Below are positions 1 through 33,400 of a DNA stretch of 37,432 bases, piece after piece (position 1 is the first letter of the stretch; the number at the start of each line of letters is the position of its first letter). Source of the DNA: Octopus bimaculoides (taxonomy: Eukaryota); NCBI RefSeq assembly GCF_001194135.2, contig NC_068988.1, positions 30,405,726-30,443,157 on the forward strand, in the 5' to 3' direction. The translations under genes were made by a program, and so were the position numbers. A model generated the notes under the pieces. The model was given only the letters and a program-made list of their open reading frames with translations, was not told the DNA's origin and made no database searches.

Positions 1-348
1 CAGTAATGTGCACAACTCTTCTATAATAATATTTTGTTGTATACTCAATTGAATATTAGCTAATAACCCATTTTCTATAGCGATGTTTGAACAAAAATTT
101 AAATAATTTTATATTTTGTTGAATTTACCTGTATTTACCTGTAATTAAAGTCACTTTGTGACAAAAATTTTGGTATAGAATTGGTTGAGAACCTTTCGTT
201 AATTTATCTTCCAAAAATCACATTAATATGTTGATAAATAAAAAAGTTAGAGTTGTTTAATGAAACCAGCCTAAATTTATGATTATGTTAGAAATTAATT
301 GAAACACATAAGGGGTGTAATTTGGTTAGAAATATGGTAACGAAAGGG
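1..348 (+). mobile_element. Right end of piggyBac-like element
   Basis: Ends TGGTAACGAAAGGG|TTAA; nearly identical to 7399-7736. Confidence 0.8.
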
Positions 349-614
349 TTAAAGGTTTGGCAAAAGAAACCGATAGAATAAGTATCAGACGTCTAAAAAT
401 AAGTACTAGGTTTGATTTGTTTGATTAAACCTTTCAAGACAGTACTCCAGCATGGCCTCAGTCCAGTGATTCAAACAACCAAGAGATAAATTTCAATTTT
501 CTGCCCCCCCCCCCACTCTACCAAATTTTCTGTTCCACCCTGATTTAATGATGACACTTTTTTTTTTGTGGAGACACCTTGCATAACATGTTTTGTTGTT
601 GTTATTGTTTTTAG

Positions 615-15800: not shown

Positions 15801-16971
15801 AATTCTGCTTCAGTTGCATATTTTCACAAACTCTTAATATTTTGCATGTGCATTTGGTCTCTGTTTCCACCTTCATTATAATAACAAGTATTGTTATTAA
15901 CACTTTATTTGTTAGTGTCAGTATTATAAAGTTGAGTTTAACTTTGTGTGTTTTTATTCAAAGGCTGACGAACTTGAACGTTTGCGGCGCAAAAGGCCAG
16001 AAGACATTTACCGAAATGATTTGGATGTCCTTCTAACTGAGCTAGATGTGAGTTGGTTTTGTCATTGAACAAGTTTCAAATATTTTCTAAGCAACGATCA
16101 CCTTTTTTTGGTATTTTTCTTTATAAAATTCACCTTTCATGTTTTCTATATTTAACCAATTGTGAAGATGTGTGGCTTCGTGGTTCGAGTATTTTGGCTC
16201 ACAATTCTAAGGTCATGAGTTCAATTCCCAGCAGTACATTGTGTCCTTGAGCAAGACACTTTATTTCACGTTGCTCCAGTCCACTCAGCTGGCAAAAATA
16301 AGTTGTACCTGTAATTCAAAGGGAGCCAGCCTTGTCACATTCTGTATCACTTTGAATCTCTCTAAGAACTACATTAAGTGTACACAAATCTGTGGAGTAC
16401 TCAGCCACTAGCATTTTAATTTCACGAGTTGCCTGTTCATTGATTCGGTCAACTGGAACCCTCATCGTCATACCTGACTGAGTGCCATTTATTTTATTAC
16501 TGCATATGACGCGGCCATGGCTATGCAGTTAAGAAGTATTGTGGATTGTTTATGTGTATGGATGAGGATGGGGGGGGGGTGGCGATCATATTAATTCTTG
16601 TAGTTGATTGCTGCCTCACTTTATGGACCCTTTAAGGATGAGAGGCCTTGACCTTGTTGCAATTTGAACTGAGAACATAAAGAGCTAGAATAAGAAACTG
16701 CAAGATATTTTGCCTGATGCTCAAATAATTCTTCTAATTGATTGTTCTGGAGTAAATACATAATAAATGAAAGATAAAGTTCATATAGTTTGTGAACCAA
16801 TGTATTTCATTGTAAACAAGTTGGAATTTAAACAAAAATATTGTGGGTGGGTGAGTTGGGAATAAAACTTGAGAAAGTCTTGACATATTGACAGGCATTT
16901 GGCATAGTGGTCAAGAGCATGGGCTACTAACCCCAAGATTCCGAGTTTGATTCCAGGCAGTGACCTGAATG

Positions 16972-17011
<40 letters not shown>

Positions 17012-20000
17012 CACCACCAACAACATCGAAAAATACCTTAGGAATGAGAACCCAGGTTTGAAATTTCCCCATGACACCTGATGCAGGCTGGAGGGTATAT
17101 CAGCCGAAACGTGTTAATGACAAACGATGAGGACAAATATCCGTCAAATGTAAATAATGTACATAATTCCTCATCTCTTAAATATAGAATTATATTGTTG
17201 TTATTTGGTTTTCTTTTACGTAGCAATTTGAAGAACAAGTGCGGGAAGACGAGAAAGTAGATATCATCAAAACCCAGAAGACTTCAAAGGGTCGTGTAAA
17301 ACAAAAGAAGATTACACTCGAGGAGACTCTTCCCTCTCCTGTTGGTCGACGTATTCAGCCTGTCATTGATCATGCTACCAAAGTGAAGGCTGAGAAAGAA
17401 GTAGCTTCTAAGAAGCGACAACAAGTAAGCGTTGATTCTTACGCGTCTTTTTGGCATTTTAGGGTAGTTGTTTGAGGCCAGTTTGAACTTATTTGGGGCC
17501 GGATTGGCCAGTTTAAATGCTAAAGGATTAAGCTTACCCTCCCCAAGTTTGTGTGAATGTTCCCCTACGTCAGTATTTCTCAACTATTTTTTTACCCATG
17601 GACTTCTTTGATTCCTGTTTTTAGCTAGTGGACCCCTGTAGCCATTTGCTGTGTAAAAATCCTGTCATACTTTTATATTTAAATATTATTAGGAATTGGA
17701 AAAAAAAAAAAATTGTTAAACTATTTTATGTATTGAAGAAACAAAATCTTATATGGACCCCAAGGGTCATATAGACCTCAGTTTAGAACCACTGATCTAT
17801 TAGAGTTGCTTTGAACTATGATATGAAATATTTTGCTTTAAGGTAGAAAAGAAGAGTGAATCAAAACGACTATCAAAGAAATGACCATATTTTTCAAAAA
17901 CACATTTTACTTCAATTTTCTTTCTTTTATTTTTACAGATCAGAAAGGAAATGAAAGAAGAAATTGGTGATGAAAATTCACAAGAACCTAAAAGCCTCAT
18001 TGAACGCCTTGGAGAACTTAAGCCAGGTGAGTTGACATTTTCCAAAATCTCTTTTCCTTTTCTGTTACTTTCTTTTCATCATTTGCTTCTTTATTTCACT
18101 CCACCTTTCTCTTCCTCTCTCTTCTCGCTGTCCCTTTCAATTTTCCCTATTTTTAATTGCTCTCTTTCTTCANNNNNNNNNNNNNNNNNNNNNNNNNNNN
18201 NNNNNNNNNNNNNNNNNNNNNNNNNNNNNNNNNNNNNNNNNNNNNNNNNNNNNNNNNNNNNNNNNNNNNNNNNNNNNNNNNNNNNNNNNNNNNNNNNNNN
18301 NNNNNNNNNNNNNNNNNNNNNNNNNNNNNNNNNNNNNNNNNNNNNNNNNNNNNNNNNNNNNNNNNNNNNNNNNNNNNNNNNNNNNNNNNNNNNNNNNNNN
18401 NNNNNNNNNNNNNNNNNNNNNNNNNNNNNNNNNNNNNNNNNNNNNNNNNNNNNNNNNNNNNNNNNNNNNNNNNNNNNNNNNNNNNNNNNNNNNNNNNNNN
18501 NNNNNNNNNNNNNNNNNNNNNNNNNNNNNNNNNNNNNNNNNNNNNNNNNNNNNNNNNNNNNNNNNNNNNNNNNNNNNNNNNNNNNNNNNNNNNNNNNNNN
18601 NNNNNNNNNNNNNNNNNNNNNNNNNNNNNNNNNNNNNNNNNNNNNNNNNNNNNNNNNNNNNNNNNNNNNNNNNNNNNNNNNNNNNNNNNNNNNNNNNNNN
18701 NNNNNNNNNNNNNNNNNNNNNNNNNNNNNNNNNNNNNNNNNNNNNNNNNNNNNNNNNNNNNNNNNNNNNNNNNNNNNNNNNNNNNNNNNNNNNNNNNNNN
18801 NNNNNNNNNNNNNNNNNNNNNNNNNNNNNNNNNNNNNNNNNNNNNNNNNNNNNNNNNNNNNNNNNNNNNNNNNNNNNNNNNNNNNNNNNNNNNNNNNNNN
18901 NNNNNNNNNNNNNNNNNNNNNNNNNNNNNNNNNNNNNNNNTTCGTTTTTGGTTTCTGTTTTTAGTTTTGTCATTCCTTTTCTTCACCCCAAATACATCGT
19001 TTCTCTGTTGAGCTTCCTGTTAGTCTTAAATCCTTTTATTCTTATAAATTTCCTTTGAATTCACTATAATCGTCTTGTTTTCTTCTGATCTATGATAGTC
19101 AGTCCTTTAAGCTTTCTGACAACATCTTTTGAGTTTGTAGGCCCCTTCTTTTTCTTTTCTGTAGTCCCTTACACTACAATGGCTTCAAGCCTTGTTTGGG
19201 ACAAAATCCTTGAAACAAACTAAAAAAAAAAAAAAAAAACCAAGATTTAATTACTTATAACGAGCTCTCAAGAATTTCTGTCGTCATTCCACCCTCTCAC
19301 TTAAATTTCTTATCTCTCTTGTTTCTCTTTTCCTTTTCTGTTACTTTCTTTTCATCATTTGCTTCTTTATTTCACTCCACCTTTCTCTTCCTCTCTCTTC
19401 TCGCTGTCCCTTTCAATTTTCCCTATTTTTAATTGCTCTCTTTCTTCAGGTTTCTTAGTCTCTTCTTCATCTATTCCCCATCTCTTACATTGCCTATATT
19501 TTAGTTTATTCTTTATATATGTAAAGGTCTTGTTTTAATAACTTCAGAGGATATTCAAAATGAAGCCGGTTGCTCAGAAGCTTCTTGTTGATGCTAAATG
19601 CCTATTTTTCCATCCTGTATCCGTATTATCCATTTGACCATTTGTCTGCTGATAACTTATTGACTGCTAGGGATCATTCTGTAAGGGTTCAGTATTCTTT
19701 TCTACTTTAAGCACAAGGCCTGAAATTTTTGGGGAGGGGGCCCAGTCGTTTAGATTGACTCCAGTATGCAACTGGTACTTAATTTATTGACCCTGAAAGG
19801 ATGAAAGGCAAAGTTGACCTCTGTGGAATTTGAACTCAGAATGTAAAGACAGATGAAATACCGCTAAGCATTTTGACTGGCATGCTAACGTTTCTGCCAG
19901 ATCGCTGCCTTATATAAGGCAAATGAACTATATCCAGTCCAAAATTCTATCTGTTTTGTGTTCAGGTTGGCCAGATTTGACCTCTCACACCAACCCTACA

Positions 20001-23000
20001 ATGTCTTTCTAAAAATAAACAATCACATCATCAACATCTCAAAGCTATGAGATAAAGTATGATTCATTCAAACCAACGTGAATAAATAAGTATCACATTT
20101 GACAGAAAAATTTGGATACTAAAGGGTTTTTGCAGTTTCTTACATTTTTATTGCTGATAGTTTGTGATTTTTAAGAAAAAAAATTCATATATTATGAAAT
20201 ATTTGATTTGTGTCTTTTTTTCTTCTTTTCTTAAATATAGCTCAAGCAATTAAATATAATTTTGGTGATGATGATGATGAAGAAGAATATTATCCCGTAC
20301 TCCATGAAAACCAGGCAGATGATTCCCCACCAGCTGATGTTTGCAATAACATGAATACGGGGGCAGAAGAAAATGATGTAGATGACGATGATGATGATTT
20401 TTTTGCTCCTAAAAAAGAGTAAGTTCAAAAAGTCAAACAAGTCCATTCGTTGAAGTAGTTGTATGCTGTCAACTTAATGTGACAGTCCCCTGAAGGGAAT
20501 AATACTACTGTTGGTTAGACCTAGGAAGTTGCACCGCTTCCTAGGTCTAACCAACAGTAGTATTATTCCCTTCAGGAGACTGTCACATTAAGTTGACAGC
20601 ATACAACTACTTCATCGTATCACTACTGCATAAATCTCTCTGAGAGATTTAGAAATGTATTATTTCTGAAGTTCATTCGTGTTATTTTGACAAAATCATA
20701 ATTTTAGAATTGGTAAAATTTGAAGAAAGATAAAAATTTTGGACATTTAAGAATATATATTCATAATTCATTTTAATAATTTTTTGTCAACCTTTAATGG
20801 GTTAAGTCATCCTTAAATGAGATAACCCTATGATTTCTTTAAAATTCAATAATATCTCCAGATAGTTTCTAACTTGGACAAGTATCTTTATATGTCTGTG
20901 TGTGTATGTGTGTACCCTTGTCTAGACATCACGTGATGGTTGTAAATGAGCATTATCTTCATATGAGTGAGGCTGTTTCCTTTCCCGCTTTCTTTGCAAA
21001 TCATGTCTCGCTTTGGGAAAAATATTACCCTGCTTGGATGTTGATGGGGGTTGGTGACAGGAAGGGCATCTCAGCTGTAGAAATCTGCCTCAACACACTG
21101 AGCCATGCTTGGATGGAAAAGTGCACATTGAAATGATGATGAGGCTTGTAATCCAGCCAAATAATGATCCCCATCTAATCAGTTTGACAACATACTGTGA
21201 ATGTTTCCATGTTTGCAAACTGTCACTCAGCTTAAGTTGTTGAAAAGAATTACTGTGGAATGTAATGGTGGACAAAAAGTATTGTTTCTACTCTAGGCAC
21301 AAGGCCTGAAATTTTTTGGGGAAGGAGCCAGTTGATTAGATCGACCCCAGTACACAACTGGTACTTAATTTATTGACCCCGAAAGGATGAAAGGCAAAGT
21401 TGACCTCAACAGAATTTGAACTCAGAATGTAGCGGCAGATGAAATACCGCTAAGCATTTAGCCTAGCGTGCTAACGTTTCTGCCAACTCACTGCCTTGGT
21501 GGACAAAATGTATTGACAAATGTGTGTTTATATGAGTTTTGGGCCACATTCAAATATAATGGATTTCAATGAAGAATGAGAAGTAGACAAGTGCAATGTA
21601 GATGTAGGTGAATTCCCAACACCAAGTGACAGGGTAAGATTTCTCGGTTAGAAAAAAGAATATTTCACTCTGACTGTAACCATGAAATTTATGCTAATAT
21701 TGGCCTAATAAGCCACCGCAGGACCTACGATGAGTAAAGCTTCTAATCTGGTCAGAGACCTGAAAGATGAATGTCAGGTGAAAGTCCCTGATATACTCTT
21801 TTACTTGTTTCAGTCATTTGACTGCGGCCATGCTGGAGCACCGCCTTTAGTTGAACAAATCAACCCCAGGACTTATTCTTTGTAAGTCTAGTATTTATTC
21901 TATCGGTCTCTTTTGCCGAACTGCTAAGTTACGAGGACGTAAACACACAAGCATCGGTTGTCAAGCGAAGTTGGGGGGACAAACACAAACACACACACAC
22001 ACAATAGGTTTCTTTCAGTTTCAGTCTACCATTTCCATTCACAGGGCTTCAGTTGGTCTGAGGCTACAGTAGAAGATACTTGCCCACGGTGCTACGCAGT
22101 GGGACTGAACCCAGAACCCTGTGTTTGGGCAGCAAACTTCTTACCATGCAAGCACATCTGCACCATTGGTAGATTTTTTTTGTTTTTTAACGATCCTTGA
22201 AACGTTTGTTTCTTTTGCAGTGCAAAGAAGCCCACTTCTCCTGCGAAGCCCACTTCTCCTGCGAAGCCCACTTCTCCTGCGAAGCCCACTTCCCCTGCAA
22301 AGGCAGCCAGCCCCAAGTTTGACGATGATGATTCTTCTGAGGATGAAAATGCCGACTTGTTTAGCCGAGTCAGTGAACAAAACAAGAAAGCTCGAGACGA
22401 CGCTGTCTTTGGGATATCAACTACACTTATAAAACCATCAATTAAAACCACAATTCCCAAAGAACCTATGAAAAGTGAGTGCTTTTGGCTTTCTTTATAA
22501 ATTTCTGATTATGATATTATATCTTGTAGTAAAAATTGTTTGCCAACATAACATGGCAGTCCTGGTTTAGGACGAATGTTGCTGAAATTAAACCCCAGGA
22601 GACATCGTCTCCCGCTGGCTATACGACACGATCTGTGTCCTTATATTTTCGAACAATATAAGGACACAGATTGTGTCATATAGCTACCTGGAGGCGATGT
22701 CTCCTGGGACTAAATTTTAGTAACATGTTATGTTGGCAAACAATCTTTACTTCAAAGTACTGTTGCTGAATATCTCATGTTATGAGATTTAAAAATAGTA
22801 ATTTTCTAATTTATAAATCAGTGACTAGTTGTCACTTTGAAAACTATATATTTCGAACGGGAATTTGGTAGCGCCACCTCTAGCTGAGCAATTATTCTGT
22901 TGAAGGGAAATAACCCAGAAATCGCGATACACAGATATTGTTTTGAGCTGAGCTGGGGTGTTAGATTCCCTTGTTCAAAAATATAAGGACACGAATCATG

Positions 23001-26000
23001 TCATATAGCCAGCTGGAGACGATGTCTCCTGGGGCTAAATTACAGCAACATTCGTCCTAAACCAGGACTGCCATGTTATGTTGGCAAACAATCTTTACTA
23101 CAAAGTACTGTTGCTGAATATCTCTCGTTGTGAGATTTAAAAATAGTAATTTTCTAACGATATATCTTGTCACATCTAAAAATAAAATCTTTTTTTTTTT
23201 TTTTCTTGTCTGCAATCCTGTTTGTTTTTCATTTTATTTTGCAATGTTGTGCCTCAAGACATCAGCAGTCTTCAGCCTTCATGCAAATCTATCAAAACTT
23301 CCCAGTTGTGGGCTTCACAAATTTCTCATTTCTTGGATCAGTTGCTTTCTATCAGAGCATATCATTGAAGCATACCTTGATGGAGTTCTTTCTTCCCTGT
23401 ACTTAACCGATCCTGGTGTCCTGCTGAGCTCGGTTCTCTTCCTGCATCTCTTTCTTACTCGCTGCCTCATGCAACACTGCCCACTCGTATTCAGATGGCA
23501 CAAACCATCTCTAGTTACTAGACATCATCTACACACCACATACCAAACCTGTATTGATTTCATGAATAGAGTCCTTGAAAGTATCCTTCAGTGGGGTCAA
23601 ACCAACCTTGTTTCTTTTTCACAACTAACAAACTCAAGCAACACTCATATGAAGAACCATTCACTCCCTCTAATATGAGTGGTACTCAGTTCAAGTCCTC
23701 ACAGTCGGTTCAAACAAATTCTGGGCCTCACTATCATCAAGGCTCTCTCATAGAAAAAATGCACCCTCTGTGTAACTAAGACTGCATCCCAAAGGCTAAC
23801 CCTACTCTTTAGGGCCAGAAGTTATTTCAGCCCCTGACAGCTGTTGACACAAGCCTGTAATGAGGTCCATAAACTCCTTAAACTTCCAGTTATTTTATGC
23901 TCCTTTATTGATATTTATTTACATGCATGCTTAATAAATGTTCCTCAGAATAATTGACTTCAATTGTCAAATATTGTTTTTGTTTGAATTTAAATATAAT
24001 ATTAGTCCACCTTCTATTTACAGGCACCATCACTTACCATTTATCTAGCGACGATGAGGATAAAGAACTCGACTTTGTACCTGAAGAACCTCTGAAGAAA
24101 GCAGTAAAGAAAAAGGCTCCCAAAAAAGAAAAGACAACAGAAAAATCCGGTAAATAAGAGTTTATATATCTTTTGTGATTCCGTGTGACGGAGGGAAGGC
24201 AAATAAAACTGAACATCGTGAGACTTTAGCTTAGAAGGGATGTATTTTGCATCGCCATTAAGAGTAGTGATGATGGAAATCTCTACATGGTTGTGTACCA
24301 ATGAGGGATTCTTTGTGTATTTACTAAATCTGCTTAAGGGGGGAATTCCCCTCCTCTTTTTTTCTTCTTTTTGCTTTTGCACATATTTGCTAGAGTAACT
24401 GTTCTTCTATCCAGAAATCCAACTCAACATAGTCTCAGTAGCAAGTAATGCCTTTCTGTCCTCTTTCGACCCAACTCTGTGGGTGCCATGTTATTTCTGC
24501 TCCGAAGCCATTATTTGCCTGCAATGAAGTGACTCTATTGACATTTAACTGACCATATCCAGCCCGAATATTCTACCTGTTTTATGTTCAAATGAACCAG
24601 ATCTGGCTTGTCACACGTGTCCTGCAATGTCATTCTGAAATAAACCACCACATATGAGGTAATAGACGATTCATTGAAAACAATGTGAAGGTATAAAACA
24701 TTACATTTGTCAGAGCAACCTGAATGCTAAATGGTTCAGCCAGCTGTGTCAGTTAATAAAAAAAAAAAGCTCTCCCCCTCACACGATAACATTTCAATAG
24801 TTTTATCATTATTTTATGATCTATTTGCACTACTATTTATTGAACACCAATTCTCTACATTTTGGTAATGCTTCAAGTGAACTACAACATGTTTCTCTTT
24901 GGGAATGTTCTTCCATTGCTGTTGGATAGCCTCATTTTATCTGGAGTAACCACTTTTTGCCCATTGACTCCTTTGCTTGCTATTTTAACTCAGGTGGACC
25001 CTCATAGACAAACAATGTCTAAAAGAAACCTTATATATTTATAATTAAATACCTCTTATATGGGCCCCACTTAAGAACCACTGCTTTCTAGCAAATAATT
25101 ATTACCTTCAAATATCGTCATGATGTGTGTTTCTTCCCTATTAACAGCTTGTTTGCTATTCTGCTGATGTGTGTGCATACGTATATGTGCTTTTTCTGTT
25201 TAAGTTTTGTGAGATGATTCCTATCTGCTTGTGAATTAACTCCACCATAACAACGCTTTTTCCTTGTTTAATTGTGTGCAACCACTATGTTGACTTAATT
25301 TAGACCGCAAAGAACGTGAAATCTTTAGAGCTTTTAGACGAAGTGTTTCACAAAGCGAACCAAGTCAATCCAGCAAATCCAAGCCTCCAAAAACAACTCC
25401 TGGTACTTCTTATTTTTGTTACTGTTGGTTAACGTTCACTAAAACTTTTTCTTAGTTAGCTTGTTTAATTACTGACTAAATTCCTGATAACTAATTCCAG
25501 AGCTGAATTTTAATTTTCGATTGGATTTTCAATTCGTTTTCGTTTACTAATGCATTTGGAAACAAGCGTATTACCATTTCAGTTTGTTCTTGACTAGGAA
25601 TGTAAGTTTGCATGCTTAGCCAGAGAAAACGGTTTGAAAGTTACAGCAATGTATCCTGCCTGAAACATTGTAATAGAGTTATAAGCCTGGTATACTTTAA
25701 GCCCAGAACATTTACTAGTTAAGACCATGTAGTGAAGATCGTATGTCATCTAGGCAAAGTACTACAGCCATGTTGTCATTTTGGCAAATAAAAATACATA
25801 ATAAATAGTTTAAAAACTATTTTCTTAGCCGTTTTCCTATAACTACTGGCTGTCCTACTTAAAGCTAATCTTTCGGTGGCTCATTGGAGTGAACAGAGAG
25901 TTACAGCCCTTGCTGGAGCAATGTACAATGGCTGTCATAAGATTGAAACTTTTATGTGACCAGCTGGAGCAATCAGCATAACCTCACAGACAACTCATTA

Positions 26001-28399
26001 CATTCAATAGCACTCGCACTTTTAGTTTCTCCACTGAAACAATCTCCCCTTCATTGTACTGCTGTCTGAAACCTATTCGTTCCATCCAGCTGTAAAAACT
26101 GCCAAAACAGAGACTGAAGTCTGGTGCAGTCTTCTGCCTGGTCAGATCCTGTCAAACCGTCCAACCCATGCCAGCATGGAAAGGCAGATGTTAAACGATG
26201 TTGATGATGACAATGCTCATTTACGACCATAACATGATGTCCAGGCAAGGGTACACACAGACACACAATTATCCATAGTGATCTATTTACACACACACAC
26301 ACACACATTATGCTTCTAGCTTTCATCCGTCAAGTGCACTCAGTAGGACATGGGTAGCTAGGATGTATATAACAACGAGGGCCTCTTTAGCAAGTAGGAC
26401 CTTTATAAGAAGGTCACTGGGACCTGTATAACAACTGCATCAGCCTCTGCACATTTCCCAGCTAACACTACTAACAATTATTTGGATTTAGTTGTATTGA
26501 ACTCTTTGTTAATTATCCTATTCATTATTTCATAATAAGCAATTACTTCTTTTCTGGGTATACTAATTACCACTTCAATAAATGCAAGTCATGTTTTCCT
26601 TACTCATTTTCTGTACCAATCACTGACTCCTTGTTTTCTATTCTGTTGTATTCTATTCAGCTTGTTTTCTATTCTGATGGTGTGTGTGCTTATGTGTGCT
26701 TTTTCTTTTTAAAGTTTTGTGAGATGATTCCTATCTGCTTGTGAATTAACTTCACTTTAACAATGCTTTTTCCTTGTTTGATTGTCTGCAAAAACTATGT
26801 TGACTTAATTTAGGCCGAAACCAACCTGTAATCTTTAGTGCTTTCAAAAGAACAGTTTCAGAAGATAAACCAAGTCAAACCAGCAAATCCAAGCCTTCAA
26901 AAACAACTTATGGTACTTCTTATTTTTGTTGCCGTTGGTTAACGTTCACTAAAACTGTTCTATATTTTAGAGATGACGAATTATGTCCATTATTTACATT
27001 TGATGGATATTTGTCTTCATCTTGTCTGTCTTTAACACAGTATTTCAGCTGATATACCCTCCAGCCATCATCAGGTGTCTTGGGGAAATTTCGAACTTAG
27101 GTTCTCATCCCTCAGGTATTTTTCAATGTTATTATTATTATAATTATTAGTATTATTATTCAGTTCAGTGCCTGGAATCGAATTTGTAATCTTGGGGTTA
27201 GTAGGACACGCTTTTAACCAGTATGCCATAGGCGTGGGTGTATGGCGTTGTGGGTAAGAGTGCGGTCTACTAATCCCAAGATTGCGAGTTTGATTCCAGG
27301 CAGTGACCTAAAAACAAAAAAGGAAAGTTCGAGCAAGGTTGTTGCCATTGCCGCTGGACTGGCTCCTGTGCAGGTGGCACATAAAAAAACACCATTTGAG
27401 CGTGGCCGTTGCCAGTACCGCCTGACTGGCCCTCGTGCCGGTGGCATGTAAAAGCACTCACTACTCTCTTGGAGTGGTTTTCGTTAGGAAGGGCATCCAT
27501 CTGTAGAAACTCTGCCAGATCAGATTGGAACCTGGTGCAGCCAATCTGTTCGCCAGTCCTCAGTCAAATCGTCCAACCCATACCAGCATGGAAAGTGGAC
27601 GTTATTGAAAAATACCTTAGGAATGAGAACCCAGGATCGAAATTTCCCCAAGACACCTGATGAAGGCTGGAAGGTATATCAGCCGAGACGTTGTGTTAAC
27701 AACAAACAAGATGAGGACAAATATCATCAAATGTAAATAATGTAAATAATGCTTACTAAAACTTTTTCAAAGTTAGCTTGTTTAATTACTGACTAAATTC
27801 CTGATAACTAATTTCAGAGCTGAATTTTAATTTCCGATTGGATTTTCAATTCGTTTTCGTTTACTAATGCATTTGGAAACAAGCGTANNNNNNNNNNNNN
27901 NNNNNNNNNNNNNNNNNNNNNNNNNNNNNNNNNNNNNNNNNNNNNNNNNNNNNNNNNNNNNNNNNNNNNNNNNNNNNNNNNNNNNNNNNNNNNNNNNNNN
28001 NNNNNNNNNNNNNNNNNNNNNNNNNNNNNNNNNNNNNNNNNNNNNNNNNNNNNNNNNNNNNNNNNNNNNNNNNNNNNNNNNNNNNNNNNNNNNNNNNNNN
28101 NNNNNNNNNNNNNNNNNNNNNNNNNNNNNNNNNNNNNNNNNNNNNNNNNNNNNNNNNNNNNNNNNNNNNNNNNNNNNNNNNNNNNNNNNNNNNNNNNNNN
28201 NNNNNNNNNNNNNNNNNNNNNNNNNNNNNNNNNNNNNNNNNNNNNNNNNNNNNNNNNNNNNNNNNNNNNNNNNNNNNNNNNNNNNNNNNNNNNNNNNNNN
28301 NNNNNNNNNNNNNNNNNNNNNNNNNNNNNNNNNNNNNNNNNNNNNNNNNNNNNNNNNNNNNNNNNNNNNNNNNNNNNNNNNNNNNNNNNNNNNNNNNNN

Positions 28400-28451
<52 letters not shown>

Positions 28452-30850
28452 TGTGCTTCTAGCTTTCATCCGTCAAGTGCACTCAGTAGGACATGGGTAG
28501 CTAGGATGTATATAAGAAGGGCCCATGTACGACCTCTAGAACAAGGTCACTGGGACCTGTATAACAACTGTATATTTCTTGGCTAACATTACTAACAACT
28601 ATTTGGATTTAGTTGAATTAAACTCTTTGTTAATTAACCTAATCATTATTTCATAATAAGCAGTTACTTCTTTTCTGGGTATACTAATTACCACTTCAAT
28701 ACATGTAAGTCATGTTTTCCTTACTTGTTTTCTGTACCAATCACTGACTCCTTGTTTTCTATTCTGATGGTGTGTATGCATATATGTGCTTTTTCTGTTT
28801 AAGTTTTCCTATCTGCTTGTGAATTAACTTCACCTTACCAATGCTTATTCCTTGTTTGATTGTCTGCAAAAACTATGTTGACTTAATTTAGGCCGAAACC
28901 AACCTACAATCCTTAGTGCTTTCAAAAGAACAGTTTCAGAAGATGAACCAAATCAAACCAGCAAATCCAAGCCTTCAAAAACAACTTATGGTACTTCTTA
29001 TTTTTGTTACTGTTGGTTAACGTTCACTAAAACTTTTTCTTAGTTAGCTTGTTTAATTACTGACTAAATTCCTGATAACTAATCCCAGAGCTGAATTTTA
29101 ATTTCCGATTGGATTTTCAATTCGTTTTCGTTTACTAATGCATTTGGAAACAAGCGTATTACCATTTCAGTTTGTTCTTGACTAGGAATGTAAGTTTGCA
29201 TGCTTAGCCAGAGAAAACGGTTTGAAAGTTACAGCAATGTATCCTGCCTGAAACATTGTAATAGAGTTATAAGCCTGGTATACTTTAGCCCAGAACATTT
29301 ACTAGTTAAGACCATGTAGTGAAAATCGTATGTCATCTAGGCAAAGTACTACAGCCATGTTGTCATTTTGGCAAATAAAAATACATAATAAATAGTTTAA
29401 AAACTATTTTCTTAGCCGTTTTCCTATAACTACTGGCTGTCCTACTTACAGCTAATCTTTCGGTGGCTCATTGGAGTGAACAGAGAGTTACAGCCCTTGC
29501 TGGAGCAATGCACAATGGCTGTCATAAGATTGAAACTTTTATGCGACCAGCTGGAGCAATCAGCATAACCTCACAGACAACTCATTACATTCAATAGCAC
29601 TCAAACATCTAGCTAACACTACTAACAATTATTTGGATTTAGTTGTATTAAACTCTTTGTTAATTAACCTAATCATTATTTCATAATAAGCAATTACTTC
29701 TTTTTCTGGGCATACTAATTACCAGTTCAATGGTATCTACACTTAAGTCATCTTTTCCTTTTATGGTTAAATCGTTTATCAGATTCCAGCTTTGTCTTTT
29801 GCTATCCATACACCAGGTTCATTGCAGCATGGTCTCTCCATTCTTCTTAGAATGTAATTAGAGACTCAATGTACCCTGGGTGGTGGTTAGAAAAATACAG
29901 CATTTGTCTGGTGTTTCGTTAGTTATGACACAAATGTCATGCGTCATCATAATAATGTTTTATTCCAGAACGAGTGTTTTTCATTTTTCCAGCTGTTATC
30001 GTTTTTATTGCAGTGTTTTGTTGGTCCTTTTTAGTGAAGGATGAAAATTTTGTACTAAAATTTAAAAGGGAGTCAGAGGTGCAACTTATACAGAAGTCAT
30101 CATCATCATCGTTTAACATCTGTTTTTCATCCTGGCATGGGTTGGACAGTTTGACAGGTTTAGAGATCCAGCGGCTGCACCAGGCTCCAATCTGATCCGG
30201 CAATGTTTCTACAGCTGGATGCCCTTCCTAATGCCAACCACTCTGAGAGTGTAGTGGGTGCTGTTTTTACATGCCACTGGCACAGGAGTCAGTCAGTTGG
30301 ACCTGGCATTGATCACATTCGGATAGTGTTTTTTATGTGCCACTAGCATGGGGCTCAGTCAAGTGGCACTGGCATCGGCCACATTTGGATGATGCTTTTT
30401 ATGTGCCACCAGCATGGAGGCCAGTCTGTGGGGTACTGGCATCAGTCACAATAAGATGGTGCTTTTTACATGCCGCAGGCACAGGGGACAGTCAGGCGGA
30501 CCTGGCATCGATCATGTTCGGATAGTGCTTTTTAAATGCCACCGGCATGGTGGGTATTCAGGTGGGTACTGGCATTGGCCACGTTCAGATGGTGCTTTTT
30601 ACGTGCCACCAGCAAATATAGTAAATGTGAATATCTCTGTCCTGTTGGAATAAATGTGTCTTTGTCTTTGAATTTTAAATGTTTTCAGGAATTTCATTGA
30701 TGAAGTTAAAGAGATTTTATTGATTTCTTTATTGTTATTGTCCATTTTCTAGAAAAACCTGTTAAAAAGAGAAAAACCAAAAAGAAGGAAGACAGTGATT
30801 CCGACAGTGGTTTTGTCCCTAAGAAACCCAAAGTAACTAAAGTCAAGAAA
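615..30850 (+). CDS. TOP2: DNA topoisomerase II (type IIA), multi-exon, 5'-partial and probably 3'-partial; 22 exons traced
   Basis: Hallmark motifs [16 protein letters not shown] (TOPRIM), [39 protein letters not shown] (catalytic Tyr), [10 protein letters not shown] and ELPIRTWTQ join across canonical GT-AG introns with matching phases. Confidence 0.98.
990..1246 (+). mobile_element. Octopus-type SINE-like repeat, family S1 (AGGAAGGGCATCCAG ... (ATG)n tail)
   Basis: Shares core with more than 10 copies in the window; a further copy lies at about 1392-1592. Confidence 0.7.
1658..1763 (+). CDS. TOP2: TOP2 exon (VTKNKVEK...KIKYYK-G)
   Basis: ttacag acceptor; weak donor G|GTTTTT; 106 nt; phase 1 joins next exon to give KGLGTS. 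Confidence 0.93.
2371..2729 (-). mobile_element. tRNA-derived CORE-like SINE, family S2 (OR2-like)
   Basis: Minus-strand head GTGGCTGTGTGG / GGTTCAGTCCC (A/B box-like), CACCTTGGGCAAGTGTC core; related copies at about 350-470, 3806-4100, 8478-8790, 14960-15122 and 21792-22155. Confidence 0.75.
2909..3018 (+). CDS. TOP2: TOP2 exon ([14 protein letters not shown]...ASINL)
   Basis: ttgctag acceptor, CTG|GTACGT donor, 110 nt. Confidence 0.97.
3141..3233 (+). CDS. TOP2: TOP2 exon ([14 protein letters not shown]...MGLPE), absent from ORF track
   Basis: ttttag acceptor, GAG|GTAAAT donor, 93 nt; conserved AFSKK..ERKEWL motif. Confidence 0.96.
3304..3747 (+). mobile_element. S1 SINE with 4+ copies of an internal 66-bp unit
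   Basis: Units start at 3304, 3370, 3436, 3502 and 3568, followed by the AGGAAGGGCATCC core and GATGATGAT tail. Confidence 0.8.
3806..4100 (-). mobile_element. S2 SINE copy
   Basis: Homologous to 2371-2729. Confidence 0.7.
4501..4737 (+). CDS. TOP2: TOP2 exon (LYLYGKG...DGLKPGQRK...YHHGE)
   Basis: ttctag acceptor, GAG|GTAAGA donor, 237 nt. Confidence 0.97.
4850..5060 (-). mobile_element. tRNA-derived SINE, family related to 16166-16486
   Basis: Shares CAGCTGAGTGGACTGGAGCAAC block (reverse complement at about 16270-16290); tRNA-like head on minus strand. Confidence 0.6.
5976..6124 (+). CDS. TOP2: TOP2 exon with catalytic tyrosine (ASPRY; Tyr codon 6105-6107)
   Basis: aacag acceptor, AG|GTACCA donor, 149 nt; [11 protein letters not shown] and [12 protein letters not shown] motifs. 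Confidence 0.97.
6304..7736 (+). mobile_element. piggyBac-like element spanning a gap
   Basis: TTAA|CTCTTTCGTTACCA ... TGGTAACGAAAGGG|TTAA; acidic ORF start [22 protein letters not shown] at 6563 could be a transposase N-terminal relic. Confidence 0.8.
7969..8200 (+). CDS. TOP2: TOP2 exon (SVGKRIF...[12 protein letters not shown]...DPLNM)
   Basis: ttgcag acceptor, ATG|GTGATT donor, 232 nt, phase 2-0. Confidence 0.96.
8356..8790 (+). mobile_element. S1 fragment fused to S2 3' portion
   Basis: One 66-bp-type unit, then GGCACCTTG...GACTGAAACAAATAAAAGAAT. Confidence 0.65.
9359..9558 (+). CDS. TOP2: TOP2 exon (VPWFKNFKG...ELPIRTWTQ...PSVI)
   Basis: ttccag acceptor, AT|GTAATT donor, 200 nt. Confidence 0.96.
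10226..10361 (+). CDS. TOP2: TOP2 exon (DYKEYHTDT...STNSM)
   Basis: ttttag acceptor, ATG|GTAAGT donor, 136 nt. Confidence 0.96.
10725..10953 (+). mobile_element. S1 SINE copy
   Basis: AGGAAGGGTATCCAG core and GATGATG tail; another copy at about 11655-11950. Confidence 0.7.
11083..11278 (+). CDS. TOP2: TOP2 exon (VLFDQNGC...KIDGLVKI)
   Basis: ttgcag acceptor, G|GTGAGA donor, 196 nt. Confidence 0.96.
11410..11500 (-). mobile_element. Truncated hammerhead-bearing repeat (family H1)
   Basis: Reverse complement reads GACGC CTGATGA A GGCTG...CAACC GAAA TG TT. Confidence 0.7.
12565..12662 (+). CDS. TOP2: TOP2 exon (ENVSKKDL...[10 protein letters not shown]...KNK)
   Basis: ttctag acceptor, AAG|GTAAAA donor, 98 nt. 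Confidence 0.95.
12791..13007 (+). mobile_element. 217-bp piggyBac-like MITE
   Basis: TTAA|CCCTTTCGTTA ... AAAAAGG|TTAA; a related copy starts at about 13039 and runs into the gap. Confidence 0.75.
14708..14842 (+). CDS. TOP2: TOP2 exon (EKDESSDD...[22 protein letters not shown]...EAK), absent from ORF track
   Basis: tgttag acceptor, AAG|GTAAAT donor, 135 nt; conserved FNYxLxxPLWxLTKEK motif. Confidence 0.95.
15964..16047 (+). CDS. TOP2: TOP2 exon ([28 protein letters not shown]), absent from ORF track
   Basis: ttcaaag acceptor, GAT|GTGAGT donor, 84 nt; matches the ELxxLxxKxPxDLWxxDL segment. Confidence 0.9.
16166..16486 (+). mobile_element. tRNA-derived SINE with CORE-like segment
   Basis: GTGGCTTCGTGG / GAGTTCAATTCC boxes; TGTGTCCTTGAGCAAGACACTT core. 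Confidence 0.7.
16894..17189 (+). mobile_element. H1 element: tRNA-like head + (AAT)n + hammerhead-motif tail
   Basis: A box TGGCATAGTGG 16900-16910, B box-like GAGTTTGATTCC, hammerhead motif 17073-17115; homologous to both arms of 26957-27754. Confidence 0.8.
17224..17424 (+). CDS. TOP2: TOP2 exon (QFEEQVRED...[13 protein letters not shown]...KKRQQ)
   Basis: cgtag acceptor, CAA|GTAAGC donor, 201 nt; LPSPxGxR motif. Confidence 0.93.
17571..17794. mobile_element. hAT/Charlie-like MITE
   Basis: Termini CAGTATTTCTCAA ... TTTAGAACCACTG; no clear TSD. Confidence 0.5.
17939..18026 (+). CDS. TOP2: TOP2 CTD exon (IRKEMKEE...[12 protein letters not shown])
   Basis: ttacag acceptor, G|GTGAGT donor, 88 nt, phase 0-1. 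Confidence 0.9.
19690..19909 (-). mobile_element. tRNA-derived SINE with Deu/Nin-like domain, family S3
   Basis: Minus strand GCCTTTCATCCTTTCAGGGTCAATAAATTAAGTACC; copies at about 12000-12160 and 21282-21497. Confidence 0.7.
20241..20418 (+). CDS. TOP2: TOP2 CTD acidic exon ([16 protein letters not shown]...FFAPKK)
   Basis: aatatag acceptor, GA|GTAAGT donor, 178 nt, phase 1-2. Confidence 0.85.
20451..20614. mobile_element. 164-bp palindromic MITE-like insertion with 4-bp TSD TCGT
   Basis: 78-bp arms with 1 mismatch, 8-nt loop, TCGT on both flanks. Confidence 0.8.
21282..21497 (-). mobile_element. S3 SINE copy
   Basis: Homologous to 19690-19909. Confidence 0.7.
21792..22155 (-). mobile_element. 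S2 SINE, near full length
   Basis: Homologous to 2371-2729. Confidence 0.75.
22221..22474 (+). CDS. TOP2: TOP2 CTD exon with (KPTSPA)4 repeat (AKKPTSP...PKEPMK)
   Basis: ttgcag acceptor, A|GTGAGT donor, 254 nt, phase 2-1, open in the expected frame. Confidence 0.87.
22228..22299 (+). repeat. Coding 18-bp minisatellite x4 (KPTSPA)
   Basis: AAGCCCACTTCTCCTGCG units, near identical. Confidence 0.95.
22524..23157. mobile_element. Foldback MITE with 133-bp TIRs and an extra right arm plus flank
   Basis: 22524-22656 is the reverse complement of 22971-23103; a second right arm occupies 22655-22755. Confidence 0.75.
23240..23800 (+). mobile_element. Decayed non-LTR (CR1/Jockey-like) reverse transcriptase fragment
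   Basis: LSKLPSCG...SWISCFLS...LDGVLSS...PGV resembles the segment before GVPQGS; frameshifted YSDG at about 23488 matches the YADD position; [12 protein letters not shown] resembles WxxxNxxxFN. Confidence 0.7.
24024..24149 (+). CDS. TOP2: TOP2 CTD exon ([14 protein letters not shown]...KTTEKS)
   Basis: ttacag acceptor, G|GTAAAT donor, 126 nt, phase 1-1. Confidence 0.87.
25304..25402 (+). CDS. TOP2: TOP2 CTD 99-nt exon, copy A ([33 protein letters not shown])
   Basis: ttaatttag acceptor, G|GTACTT donor, phase 1-1, open frame. Confidence 0.7.
26814..26912 (+). CDS. TOP2: TOP2 CTD 99-nt exon, copy B ([33 protein letters not shown])
   Basis: same splice sites as copy A, phase 1-1, open frame. 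Confidence 0.72.
27034..27079 (-). ncRNA. Degenerate hammerhead motif (H1)
   Basis: GACAC CTGATGA T GGCTG..CAGCT GAAA TA CT GTGTT on minus strand. Confidence 0.55.
27652..27697 (+). ncRNA. Hammerhead motif (H1) with A14G change
   Basis: GACAC CTGATGA A GGCTG..CAGCC GAGA CG TT GTGTT. Confidence 0.6.
28892..28990 (+). CDS. TOP2: TOP2 CTD 99-nt exon, copy C ([33 protein letters not shown])
   Basis: same splice sites as copies A and B, phase 1-1, open frame. Confidence 0.75.
30097..30612 (-). mobile_element. S1 SINE with about 5-6 internal 66-bp units
   Basis: (CAT)n tail, GGATGCCCTTCCT core, tandem units. Confidence 0.8.
30753..30850 (+). CDS. TOP2: TOP2 CTD exon with basic NLS-like cluster ([33 protein letters not shown])
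   Basis: ttctag acceptor, AAA|GTAAGT donor, 98 nt, phase 1-0; no stop codon, so more exon(s) must follow. Confidence 0.88.
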
Positions 30851-31075
30851 GTAAGTATTTTGTCATTTCTCTCTCCATTTGTATCTTCCTCATATTGCCA
30901 TAATTTCCATAACAGCTACTACAGGAGATCATTATTTCTTAACGAACATTGATTATTCTCATAATTTCATTCTAATTTGAATTGTTTTTATTGCCATTTC
31001 TGTACGATGATAGGATTGTCTGTGAAGTTCTGATACTGTATCGTTGAAGTACTTGCTTAACCCTTTAGTATTTAA

Positions 31076-31299
31076 CCCTTTCCATACCAACCCACCTGAA
31101 ACCAGCTCTGGCTCTGTAGTACAATTGTCTTGTTTTCATCAGTTCTGAATTAAAATCTTCCACCAAACCTTAGTCACAATTTATGTTCCTAACACTAACT
31201 TAATAATGATAACTAAGTTAGTTTACTAAATTCTTTGTTATATTTAAAGTAATTGAAAGAAACACAGAGCATCTCAGAATAAATACAGTAACGAAAGGG
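31076..31299 (-). mobile_element. piggyBac-like MITE, same family as 12791-13007, opposite orientation
   Basis: TTAA|CCCTTT ... CGAAAGGG|TTAA; reverse-complement similarity along its length. Confidence 0.75.
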
Positions 31300-31344
31300 T
31301 TAAAATTGGAGAGAGAATAAAGTGGGCCTTAACGATAATGATGA

Positions 31345-31345
<1 letters not shown>

Positions 31346-31395
<50 letters not shown>
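31346..31395 (+). repeat. (TATC)n microsatellite running into a gap
   Basis: Read directly; other microsatellites include (CA)n 28400-28450, (ATG/ATA)n about 35600-35710 and (CT)n 36551-36589. Confidence 0.95.
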
Positions 31396-32956: not shown

Positions 32957-33400
32957 CATCATCATCATCGTTTAACGTCTGCTTTCCATGTTAGCATGGG
33001 TTGGACGATTTGACTGCAAGCCAGAAGGCTGCACCAGGCTCCAATCTGATCTGGCACAGTTTCTACAGCTGGATGTCCTTCCTAATGCCAACCACTCTGA
33101 GAGTGTAGTGGGTGCTTTTACTTGCCACCGGCACAAGGGCCAGTCACACGGTACTGGCAATGGCCATGCTCAAAGTGGTGTTTTTTATGTGCCACCTGCA
33201 CGGGAGCCAGTCCAGTGGCACTGGCAACGACCTCACTTGAATGATTTTCTAACGTGCCACCAGCACAAGTGCTAGAAGGCAACGCTGGTAATGGTTACGC
33301 TCAAATGGTGCTATTTAAGGGCCACTAGCATGGAAGCCAGACAGCTGCTCTGGCAATGAACACACTCAGACAGTGCTGTTAGTGCTCCACTGGCGCGGTG
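32957..33400 (-). mobile_element. S1 SINE with degenerate internal units
   Basis: (CAT)n tail and core as in the other copies. Confidence 0.75.

What the first reader, a model, noticed from the sequence alone, without database searches (positions are those of the whole stretch)
25304..29602. Duplicated exons about 20 times more diverged than their adjacent introns
Seen: exons A and C differ at 23/99 nt (only about 3 changes synonymous), with differences up to 2 nt before the donor. The introns immediately after them (25403-26015 vs 28991-29602) differ at only about 7 of 612 positions. The intron upstream of A is about 10% diverged from that of B. Inference: either gene conversion or unequal crossover homogenised the intron with a breakpoint at the donor while selection protected exon differences, or the exons are under strong diversifying selection, which would be unusual for a housekeeping enzyme.
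Basis: partly seen in the sequence, partly recalled or inferred. Interest (0 to 1): 0.7.

Follow-up and report, generated by a model that had tools for sequence, protein, structure and literature searches.

The report
Patchwork triplicated exon in topoisomerase II tail
A 99-base exon in the floppy tail of the DNA topoisomerase II gene sits in three tandem copies whose old and young segments are mixed, most likely because neighbouring copies overwrote each other's introns, which is an ordinary pattern and not a sign of unusual selection.

Summary
The numbers are right. Exon A (25304-25402) and exon C (28892-28990) differ at 23/99 nt. The introns after them differ by 6 substitutions and one 1-nt indel in 612 nt. 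The A and B upstream introns differ by 10.5%.

The reading needs correcting in four ways.
1. The gene is DNA topoisomerase II, but these exons encode its disordered, fast-evolving C-terminal tail, not the enzyme core.
2. The diverged block is not confined to the exon. It runs 25242-25400, and the intron part outside the invariant 20-nt acceptor region is 21% diverged, like the exon.
3. dN/dS is about 1.0-1.2 and differences are spread 9:8:6 over codon positions, so diversifying selection is not supported.
4. The units are a two-breakpoint mosaic: C groups with B inside the block and with A on both flanks (0/5000 permutations).

Best explanation: an old tandem exon triplication whose introns were repeatedly homogenised by non-allelic gene conversion or unequal exchange, leaving one old island. 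Whether selection or mismatch density spared the island cannot be told here.

The gap (27888-28399) is intronic and its flanks are colinear with unit 1. No reads, transcripts or orthologues were reachable, so an assembly artefact stays a minority rival. This is an ordinary kind of pattern, of low to moderate interest.

The parts
24049..24149 (+). Upstream tail exon of TOP2 (…[34 protein letters not shown]). It ends in phase 1 (…TCC G|gtaaat).
   Evidence: Sequence and frame read. It joins in frame to the exon ending at 22476 (AG|C) and to any of A, B or C.
25148..25241 (+). Distal part of the upstream intron segment 'r' of unit A. This is the left edge of the tandem unit and it is young: close to copy C.
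   Evidence: A-C 1/59 ungapped sites, A-B 5/59, B-C 6/59. Homology with B and C starts at about 25148.
25242..25400 (+). Old divergence island of unit A: 62 nt of intron plus exon A. A differs from B and C at 29-32 of 159 sites, while B and C differ at 8.
   Evidence: block 25247-25400, 0/5000 permutations. Transitions to transversions 14:18.
25284..25303 (+). 20 nt before the acceptor (CTATGTTGACTTAATTTAG region), identical in all three copies inside the otherwise roughly 21% diverged island. It is a likely branch-point and 3' splice signal under constraint.
   Evidence: Alignment. 0/20 differences against 9/42 just upstream. The functional reading is inference.
25304..25402 (+). Exon A, 99 nt, phase 1-1, encodes [33 protein letters not shown].
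   Evidence: The frame is open, with AG|…G|GTACTT boundaries.
25403..26015 (+). Downstream intron segment 's' of unit A, 99% identical to s of unit C.
   Evidence: It is not a dispersed repeat: only the three copies occur in the window.
26016..26459 (+). Inserted stretch between s and q in unit 1. It holds a SINE-like fragment (about 26083-26213), an (AC)n run and segment 'p' (26289-26459).
   Evidence: many dispersed matches to 26083-26213. p matches 28432-28570 at 88.6%. The stretch is absent between s_C and q_D.
26460..26813 (+). Segments q and r of unit B (the intron upstream of exon B).
26814..26912 (+). Exon B, 99 nt, phase 1-1, encodes [33 protein letters not shown].
26913..26956 (+). 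First 44 nt of s in unit B.
   Evidence: 2/44 differences from A and from C.
26957..27754 (+). 798-nt transposon-like insertion in s of unit B, with terminal inverted repeats of about 148 nt and the 8-bp target duplication ACTAAAAC.
   Evidence: Related copies occur elsewhere in the window.
27755..27887 (+). Continuation of s in unit B up to the gap. The first 8 nt (27755-27762) are the duplicated target site.
   Evidence: 97% identical to both A and C over 133 nt.
27888..28399 (.). Assembly gap inside the intron after exon B. It is expected to hide the rest of s_B and a J1-like stretch, about 715 nt in all.
   Evidence: Flanks are colinear with unit 1.
28400..28891 (+). (AC)n run and segments p, q and r of unit C.
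28892..28990 (+). Exon C, 99 nt, phase 1-1, encodes [33 protein letters not shown].
   Evidence: 5/99 differences from B, all nonsynonymous.
28991..29602 (+). Downstream intron segment s of unit C.
29611..29731 (+). q_D: the q segment that closes the third unit and leads into the unique downstream intron.
   Evidence: 95% identical to q_B and 94% to q_C.
30753..30850 (+). Next tail exon ([33 protein letters not shown]). It begins in phase 1, so any subset of A, B and C stays in frame.

Best explanation
The region is a tandem triplication of a roughly 1.1-kb unit inside the DNA topoisomerase II gene. Each unit holds upstream intron r, a 99-nt phase 1-1 exon, downstream intron s, and q.

The three exons encode a 33-residue lysine/serine-rich module of the disordered C-terminal tail. 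The first duplication, A against the B/C ancestor, is old: about 20% divergence survives in the island 25242-25400. B and C separated later, at about 5-7%.

Since then, non-allelic gene conversion and/or unequal crossing-over between the units has overwritten the intronic flanks several times. The latest exchange made the distal upstream intron and the whole 612-nt downstream intron of A and C about 99% alike.

The exon therefore looks 'hyper-diverged' because its flanks were rejuvenated, not because the exon evolved unusually fast.

Shown: the mosaic, the breakpoints, the discordant trees, neutral-like dN/dS, and equal divergence of exon and adjacent intron.

Inferred: the mechanism (conversion or unequal exchange), the order of events, and that all three exons are spliced.
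For: Gene identity:
- Core exons hit TOP2 (PF00521) at E down to 4e-146, and tblastn maps them to 2911-14845.

Architecture:
-.

Divergence by segment:
- Exon: A-C 23%, A-B 21%, B-C 5%.
- Proximal upstream intron 25242-25283: A-C 21%.
- Distal upstream intron: A-C 1.7%, against 8.5-10% to B.
- s: A-C 1.0%, A-B and B-C 3.6%.
- p 10.7%, q about 7%.

Mosaic:
- Site patterns give a block 25247-25400 where C groups with B, flanked by sites where C groups with A. 0/5000 permutations reach the statistic.
- The single breakpoint falls at 25400, 0/2000.

Selection tests:
- dN/dS is 1.04 (A-B) and 1.23 (A-C), with differences 9:8:6 over codon positions.

Age of the differences:
- The few A-C differences in s are 5 transitions, 1 transversion and a 1-nt indel, one of them at a CpG. 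This is as expected for recent real mutations. The island has 14 transitions to 18 transversions, as expected for old divergence.

Alternatives for s:
- s is not a dispersed repeat. It holds no Rfam family and no notable RNA structure (best z = -2.6 of 76 windows). Constraint on a hosted element therefore does not explain its identity.

Precedent:
- Exons more divergent than introns, with conversion tracts mostly in introns, is documented for primate L/M opsin genes (PMC3213168). The general theory is in PMC3924837.
Against: - Only one assembly of one individual was available, with no reads, transcripts or orthologues.
- Homogenisation of both flanks of A and C around an untouched middle needs two tracts, or one discontinuous tract, between non-adjacent units. 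That is less simple than a single event.
- The alternative single event, a short B-to-C conversion of the island, conflicts with the ages. B-C island divergence is 5.0% against 1.0% for the A-C flanks (p = 0.003).
- The window contains at least one suspicious exact duplicate across a gap, so assembly quality is imperfect.
Confidence: 0.6

Rival explanations
1. Gene conversion is real, and the island coincides with exon A because selection removes every conversion that would overwrite it. Exon A would then encode a functionally distinct tail module, possibly an alternative cassette or mutually exclusive exon. This would resemble the primate L/M opsin genes.
For: - The right-hand boundary falls within 2 nt of the exon end and the island contains the whole exon.
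- All three exons keep an open frame, the same length and the same phase.
- The 20 nt at each acceptor are invariant inside the diverged island.
- The 3' third of the exon (SKSKPxKTT) is much less diverged than the 5' two thirds.
- Precedent: PMC3213168.
Against: - dN/dS is about 1 and differences are even over codon positions, so there is no sign of constraint or adaptation in the coding differences.
- The island extends 62 nt into the intron at the same divergence.
- A randomly placed 159-nt island would contain the exon in about 8% of placements, so chance is not excluded.
- A dense-mismatch barrier to heteroduplex formation explains the same boundaries without selection.
Confidence: 0.25
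2. Assembly artefact. The near-identity of s_A and s_C (and of distal r) comes from repeat collapse, from gap-filling with reads of the wrong copy, or from two haplotypes of one locus threaded behind different exons. The true copies would then be as diverged as their surroundings.
For: - The scaffold is a gap-rich draft, with 7 gaps in 37 kb, several abutting microsatellites.
- The gap at 27888 starts inside s_B, within the 182-nt stretch where s_A and s_C are identical.
- 18048-18172 is 100% identical to 19324-19448 across another gap.
- 1% divergence is within the range of allelic differences in some marine invertebrates (my background knowledge).
Against: - s_A and s_C each lie inside a contig, anchored on both sides by copy-specific sequence (exon A and J1; exon C and q_D plus unique intron).
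- They differ at 7 sites with a transition-biased spectrum.
- B's s copy carries its own 5 private differences and a private transposon insertion.
- Mis-threading swaps segments between copies but does not lower the divergence between them.
Confidence: 0.13
3. Units B and C are diverged haplotypes of one unit wrongly scaffolded in tandem, so the gene really has two copies (A and B/C).
For: - B and C are joined only through the gap 27888-28399.
- Their homologous parts p, q, r, exon and s are colinear.
Against: - Divergence of 5-11% with several indels and an 798-nt insertion difference is far above usual allelic levels.
- Unit C lacks the p-containing insertion after s that unit 1 has. This fits three distinct positions in an array.
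- It would not remove the A-C anomaly.
Confidence: 0.06
4. Diversifying (positive) selection accelerated the exons while the introns show the true, low neutral divergence of a recent duplication. No conversion is involved.
For: - Nonsynonymous divergence (24%) exceeds the divergence of the upstream intron as a whole (9%, p = 0.003) and of the downstream intron (1%).
- All 5 B-C exon differences are nonsynonymous.
Against: - Synonymous divergence within the exon is equally high (pS 0.20, dN/dS 1.0-1.2).
- Intron 25242-25283 is 21% diverged.
- The introns themselves range from 1% to 11% and give conflicting trees, which selection on the exon cannot produce.
Confidence: 0.03

Closest known systems
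Primate X-linked L/M opsin genes: introns homogenised by gene conversion, central exons kept distinct
   Same: Tandem paralogous units in which exon divergence significantly exceeds intron divergence. Exons and introns give different trees. Conversion tracts lie mostly in introns (PMC3213168).
   Different: - There whole genes are duplicated; here single exons inside one gene are.
- In opsins the protected sites are known spectral-tuning residues and purifying selection is demonstrated with population and orthologue data. Here no functional difference is known and dN/dS is about 1.
- Here the island includes 62 nt of intron.
Mosaic divergence and concerted evolution of tandem paralogues by interlocus gene conversion (general model)
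   Same: A patchwork of old and young segments, apparent duplication ages that differ by segment, and exchange that stops where pairing is disrupted by accumulated divergence (PMC3924837; a modelling preprint 10.1101/2025.10.29.685298 is listed by title and abstract only).
   Different: This is an intragenic case with three roughly 1.1-kb units. Direction, number of events and tract ends cannot be resolved with one genome.
Tandemly duplicated alternative or mutually exclusive cassette exons (e.g. Kondrashov & Koonin 2001; Letunic et al. 2002; from my memory, not checked here)
   Same: Adjacent exons of identical length (99 nt), identical phase (1-1), recognisable sequence similarity and identical splice-site sequences.
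   Different: - Because 99 is a multiple of 3 and the phases are symmetric, all three can also be included together as a 3 x 33-residue repeat.
- There is no transcript evidence for any splicing pattern.
- Classic mutually exclusive clusters usually have unalignable introns, whereas these are 90-99% alike.
Venom and toxin genes with conserved introns and hypervariable exons (e.g. snake PLA2 'accelerated evolution'; from my memory, not checked here)
   Same: Exons are more divergent than introns between paralogues.
   Different: In those genes dN exceeds dS and the introns are uniformly conserved. Here dN is about equal to dS, part of the intron is as diverged as the exon, and the segments have conflicting trees.

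Membership tests
DNA topoisomerase II gene (eukaryotic type IIA) | Conserved breakage-reunion core (Pfam PF00521 and neighbouring domains) encoded colinearly on one strand | tested here: met
   The concatenated exon translation hits TOP2 proteins at E down to 4e-146, with PF00521 and PF16898 annotated. tblastn places the exons at 2911-14845 on the + strand in order.
DNA topoisomerase II gene (eukaryotic type IIA) | Exons A, B and C belong to the non-conserved, charged, disordered C-terminal tail | tested here: met
   They lie 10 kb downstream of the last conserved core exon. They are K/S/P/T-rich. They have no detectable relatives in 1.84-5.8 billion proteins. The tail's disorder and variability are described in PMC11172036.
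Mosaic paralogues made by non-allelic gene conversion or unequal exchange | Significantly heterogeneous divergence along the aligned copies, with localisable breakpoints | tested here: met
   Max-chi-square breakpoint at 25400, 0/2000. Two-breakpoint block 25247-25400, 0/5000.
Mosaic paralogues made by non-allelic gene conversion or unequal exchange | Different segments support different trees of the copies | tested here: met
   In the island 27 sites group B with C. In the flanks 10 sites group A with C.
Mosaic paralogues made by non-allelic gene conversion or unequal exchange | Paralogous introns more alike within a species than orthologous introns between species | not testable with these tools
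   No cephalopod or other close relative's locus could be retrieved.
Mosaic paralogues made by non-allelic gene conversion or unequal exchange | The copies are real, with read-level support for each copy and its linkage | not testable with these tools
   No reads or second assembly were available.
Exon under diversifying (positive) selection | dN/dS significantly above 1 | tested here: not met
   1.04 (A-B) and 1.23 (A-C), Fisher p = 1.0 and 0.77. B-C has 5 nonsynonymous and 0 synonymous differences, p = 0.58.
Exon under diversifying (positive) selection | Excess divergence confined to coding sequence | tested here: not met
   Intron 25242-25283 is 9/42 (21%) diverged between A and C. Proximal intron against exon is not significant (p = 0.22).
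Tandemly duplicated alternative or mutually exclusive exons | Adjacent exons of the same length and phase with sequence similarity and intact splice sites | tested here: met
   Each exon is 99 nt, phase 1-1, with AG|…G|GTACTT in all three. The flanking exons end and begin in phase 1.
Tandemly duplicated alternative or mutually exclusive exons | Transcripts contain one (or a regulated subset) of the exons | not testable with these tools
   No transcript or protein of this or a close species is in the searchable collections.
Tandemly duplicated alternative or mutually exclusive exons | Competing intronic RNA pairings (docking and selector sites) or another exclusion mechanism | tested here: inconclusive
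   The only long inverted repeats are transposon- or SINE-derived. There is no outstanding structure in s. A single species allows no covariation test.

The most novel reading that the evidence does not exclude
Exon A and exons B/C are alternative (perhaps mutually exclusive) cassette exons. They would give topoisomerase II isoforms with different regulatory tail modules. Selection would keep exon A distinct by purging conversions while the surrounding introns evolve in concert. This would be an opsin-like 'protected island' at the scale of a single exon inside an essential gene.
Probability: 0.15. Interest if true: 0.5.

Novelty: new member of a known kind. Interest (0 to 1): 0.25.

Why it matters
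If the assembly is right, this is a clean small example of how exchange between tandem repeats makes duplication ages look different segment by segment. It also shows how an exon can look 'hyper-diverged' simply because its flanks were rejuvenated. That is a caution for scans that use adjacent introns as the neutral yardstick.

For topoisomerase II it would show the tail growing by exon triplication. The copy number or choice of a 33-residue lysine/serine-rich module could tune tail-dependent functions such as nuclear targeting, chromatin binding and phosphorylation. It does not bear on the catalytic mechanism and does not point to a new kind of system.

Tried and rejected
- Orthologue or transcript evidence, word-indexed search. 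A search with 251 residues of the tail found nothing at E <= 1e-3.
- Exhaustive HMMER search with 167 residues. It found one low-complexity hit (E 2.4e-5, 25% identity, a 2448-residue protein with 10 stretches), which is uninformative.
- Core-region search. It found only distant TOP2s (at most 64% identity, vertebrates and arthropods, fragments of at most 716 residues) and no cephalopod or mollusc. Local phmmer of the exon peptides against those 120 proteins gave nothing.
- Independent assemblies. Three exact-ORF look-ups (a TOP2 core exon ORF, an ORF in s_A, an ORF in J1) are not on record.
- A functional element explaining the conservation of s. There is no Rfam match at gathering score in the window. 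The only sub-threshold hit, snoR160 (27.8 bits against 42), lies in the transposon junction.
- RNA structure in s. Sliding-window folding gave a best z of -2.6 among 76 windows.
- s as a dispersed repeat. It is not one.
- Docking or selector-type pairings. Only transposon-derived inverted repeats were found.
- Further diverged copies of the exon in the window. None were found by nhmmer or hmmsearch.
- An unusually weak donor as a sign of alternative splicing. GTACTT is weak, but core exons of the same gene use GTACCA and GTACGT, so no conclusion follows.
- One short B-to-C conversion of the island as the whole story. Rejected on ages: 5.0% against 1.0%, p = 0.003.
Full report
**What the window is**

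The + strand carries the 3' half of a DNA topoisomerase II gene.
- Concatenated open exon frames from 7952-17420 hit TOP2 proteins with PF00521 and PF16898 at E down to 4e-146.
- tblastn of six of those proteins places conserved exons in order from 2911 to 14845.
- Downstream of that the exons are short, charged and lysine/serine/aspartate-rich.
- This is the C-terminal tail. In TOP2A the tail is an intrinsically disordered region of about 400 residues and the most variable part of the protein (PMC11172036).
- The best database relatives are only 55-64% identical (vertebrates, arthropods).

- Exon A (25304-25402) and exon C (28892-28990) differ at 23 of 99 positions. The last differences are at 25399-25400, 2 nt before the donor.
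- The following introns (25403-26015 and 28991-29602) differ by six substitutions and one 1-nt indel.
- The intron upstream of A differs from that of B at 16/152 sites plus two indels.
- Exon against downstream intron gives Fisher p = 4e-16. A max-chi-square scan puts the change point after 25400, with 0 of 2000 permutations reaching it.

**Anatomy**

There are three tandem units. Each unit consists of:
- r, about 150 nt of upstream intron;
- a 99-nt exon;
- s, 612 nt of downstream intron;
- q, about 120-200 nt.

The coordinates are:
- Exons: A 25304-25402, B 26814-26912, C 28892-28990.
- s: A 25403-26015. B is 26913-26956, then a 798-nt transposon-like insertion (26957-27754, terminal inverted repeats of about 148 nt, 8-bp target duplication ACTAAAAC), then 27755-27887, then the gap. 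C is 28991-29602.
- q: 26460-26660, 28581-28750 and 29611-29731. The last closes unit 3 and runs into the unique downstream intron.

In units 1 and 2 an extra stretch lies between s and q. It holds a SINE-like fragment, an (AC)n run and segment p. In unit 3, s runs almost directly into q.

All three exons have the same boundaries (…TTAATTTAG| and G|GTACTT) and are open only in the frame set by the upstream exon. That exon, 24049-24149, ends …TCC G|. The next exon, 30753-30850, starts in phase 1. Any subset of A, B and C therefore stays in frame.

The encoded peptides are:
- A: [33 protein letters not shown]
- B: [33 protein letters not shown]
- C: [33 protein letters not shown]

No further copy exists in the readable window.

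**The gap**

The gap (27888-28399) lies in the intron after exon B.
- Its left flank ends at the position equivalent to 25570 in unit 1.
- Its right flank starts with the (AC)n run equivalent to about 26283-26307 and continues with p, q and r, in the same order and orientation.
- By analogy about 715 nt is missing where 512 N are written. No coding frame crosses the gap.
- The gap begins inside the 182-nt stretch where s_A and s_C are identical, a natural place for an assembler to stop.
- That contig 28400-31395 follows contig 18941-27887 rests on scaffolding only.

First, divergence is not 'exon against intron'.

| Segment | A-B | A-C | B-C |
|---|---|---|---|
| Distal r (25168-25241) | 5/59 | 1/59 | 6/59 |
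| Proximal r (25242-25303) | 8/62 | 9/62 | 3/62 |
| Exon | 21/99 | 23/99 | 5/99 |
| s, first 168 nt | 6/168 | 2/168 | 6/168 |
| s, remainder | hidden by the gap | 4/444 | hidden by the gap |

- All differences in proximal r fall in 25242-25283, which gives 9/42 = 21% for A-C. The 20 nt at the acceptor are invariant in all three copies.
- For the other segments, p is 10.7% diverged between units 1 and 2, and q is about 7% in all three pairs (B-C, B-D, C-D).
- The A-specific block is therefore 25242-25400, intron plus exon, and its intronic part is as diverged as the exon (proximal intron against exon, p = 0.22).
- The proximal intron is significantly more diverged than the distal intron (p = 0.017).

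Second, the coding differences look neutral.
- Nei-Gojobori gives Sd 4.5 and Nd 16.5-18.5, pS 0.20, pN 0.21-0.24, and dN/dS 1.04 (A-B) and 1.23 (A-C). Neither differs from 1.
- Differences fall 9:8:6 over codon positions.

Third, the copies are a mosaic.
- Among sites that group C with one other copy, C groups with A at 5 sites in distal r. It groups with B at 27 of 29 sites in 25242-25400. It groups with A again at 5 of 6 sites in s.
- The best two-breakpoint block is 25247-25400, with 0 of 5000 permutations reaching it.

Fourth, the ages differ.
- The island has 14 transitions to 18 transversions, a saturated and old spectrum.
- The seven A-C differences in s are five transitions (one at a CpG), one transversion and a 1-nt length change. 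That is what recent real mutations look like.

**Most likely history**

- An old duplication produced A and the ancestor of B/C. About 20% divergence is still visible in the island.
- A later event produced B and C, at about 5-7%. It may have been an unequal crossover within s: unit 2 combines a C-like exon with the p-containing insertion of unit 1.
- Exchanges between units then kept rejuvenating the introns. The most recent one, about 1% ago, involved A and C on both sides of the island.
- This is concerted evolution by non-allelic gene conversion or unequal exchange with one unconverted island. It is described in general terms in PMC3924837 and documented for primate L/M opsin genes. There exon divergence exceeds intron divergence and GENECONV tracts lie mostly in introns (PMC3213168).

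**Why the island was spared is open**

- Selection against overwriting exon A is possible. In its favour, the island contains the whole exon, its right edge is at the exon end, the acceptor-proximal 20 nt are invariant, and the 3' third of the exon (SKSKPxKTT) is conserved.
- A dense-mismatch barrier to heteroduplex formation predicts the same borders.
- A randomly placed 159-nt island would contain the exon in about 60 of 711 placements (8%), so chance is not excluded.

**What s is not**

- It is not a dispersed repeat.
- It holds no Rfam family.
- It holds no outstanding RNA structure.

Constraint on a hosted element therefore does not explain 99% identity over 612 nt.

**Assembly caveat**

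Points for caution:
- The scaffold has seven gaps in 37 kb, several next to microsatellites.
- 18048-18172 is an exact copy of 19324-19448 across another gap.

Points against an artefact at this locus:
- s_A and s_C are each anchored on both sides by copy-specific sequence inside one contig.
- They differ at seven sites with a mutation-like spectrum.
- s_B has its own private differences and a private transposon.

I give an artefact about 0.13, and a false B/C haplotype tandem about 0.06.

**Verdict**

- The diversifying-selection half is not supported.
- The pattern is a new instance of a well-known kind, of low to moderate interest.
- It becomes more interesting only if transcripts and orthologues show that exon A is a separately conserved alternative tail module.

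Noticed in passing
window 18048-18172 and 19324-19448 (gap 18173-18940 between them): A 125-nt stretch ending exactly at the left edge of a gap is 100% identical to a stretch 384 nt to the right of that gap. This looks like an unmerged contig overlap or false duplication made by scaffolding.
   Followed up: no
window 1-353 and 7402-7741: A 353-nt direct repeat at 94.9% identity in TOP2 introns. The second copy starts 57 nt after gap 6647-7345. It may be a dispersed repeat or a segmental copy.
   Followed up: no
window 26957-27754: A 798-nt non-autonomous DNA-transposon-like insertion private to unit B. It has terminal inverted repeats of about 148 nt (87% complementary) and an 8-bp target duplication ACTAAAAC. 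Related pieces lie at 16900-17189, 3333-3732, 32973-33267 and elsewhere.
   Followed up: partly
window 26083-26213, 27343-27604 (+) against 30096-30614 (-): Copies of the same SINE-like or satellite-bearing element lie in opposite orientation in the introns before exon B, after exon B and after exon C (arms up to 93 nt, 86-91% complementary). In the pre-mRNA they could pair and loop out exons B and/or C. This is untested.
   Followed up: no
window 22227-22302: An 18-nt tandem repeat, 4.2 copies at 96% identity, inside a coding tail exon. It encodes (AKPTSP)4 and is a second sign that this TOP2 tail grows by internal repetition.
   Followed up: no
window 30264-30614: A 66-nt tandem array (5.3 copies, 73% matches) inside a dispersed element in the intron before exon 30753-30850. 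Similar arrays occur at about 3300-3600 and 33100-33270.
   Followed up: no
window 28400-28450, 31345-31395, 36551 onward: Three of the seven gaps abut microsatellites: (AC)25, (TATC)13 and (CT)n. The gaps are therefore repeat-induced contig breaks.
   Followed up: partly
window 22724-22809 and 23072-23157: An 86-nt direct repeat at 95% identity in the intron between the tail exons ending at 22476 and starting at 24049.
   Followed up: no
window 25370-25398 (and the equivalents in B and C): The 3' third of the exon (SKSKPxKTT) has 1 A-C difference in 29 nt, against 20 in the first 66 nt. This suggests constraint on that motif or on a splicing enhancer.
   Followed up: partly
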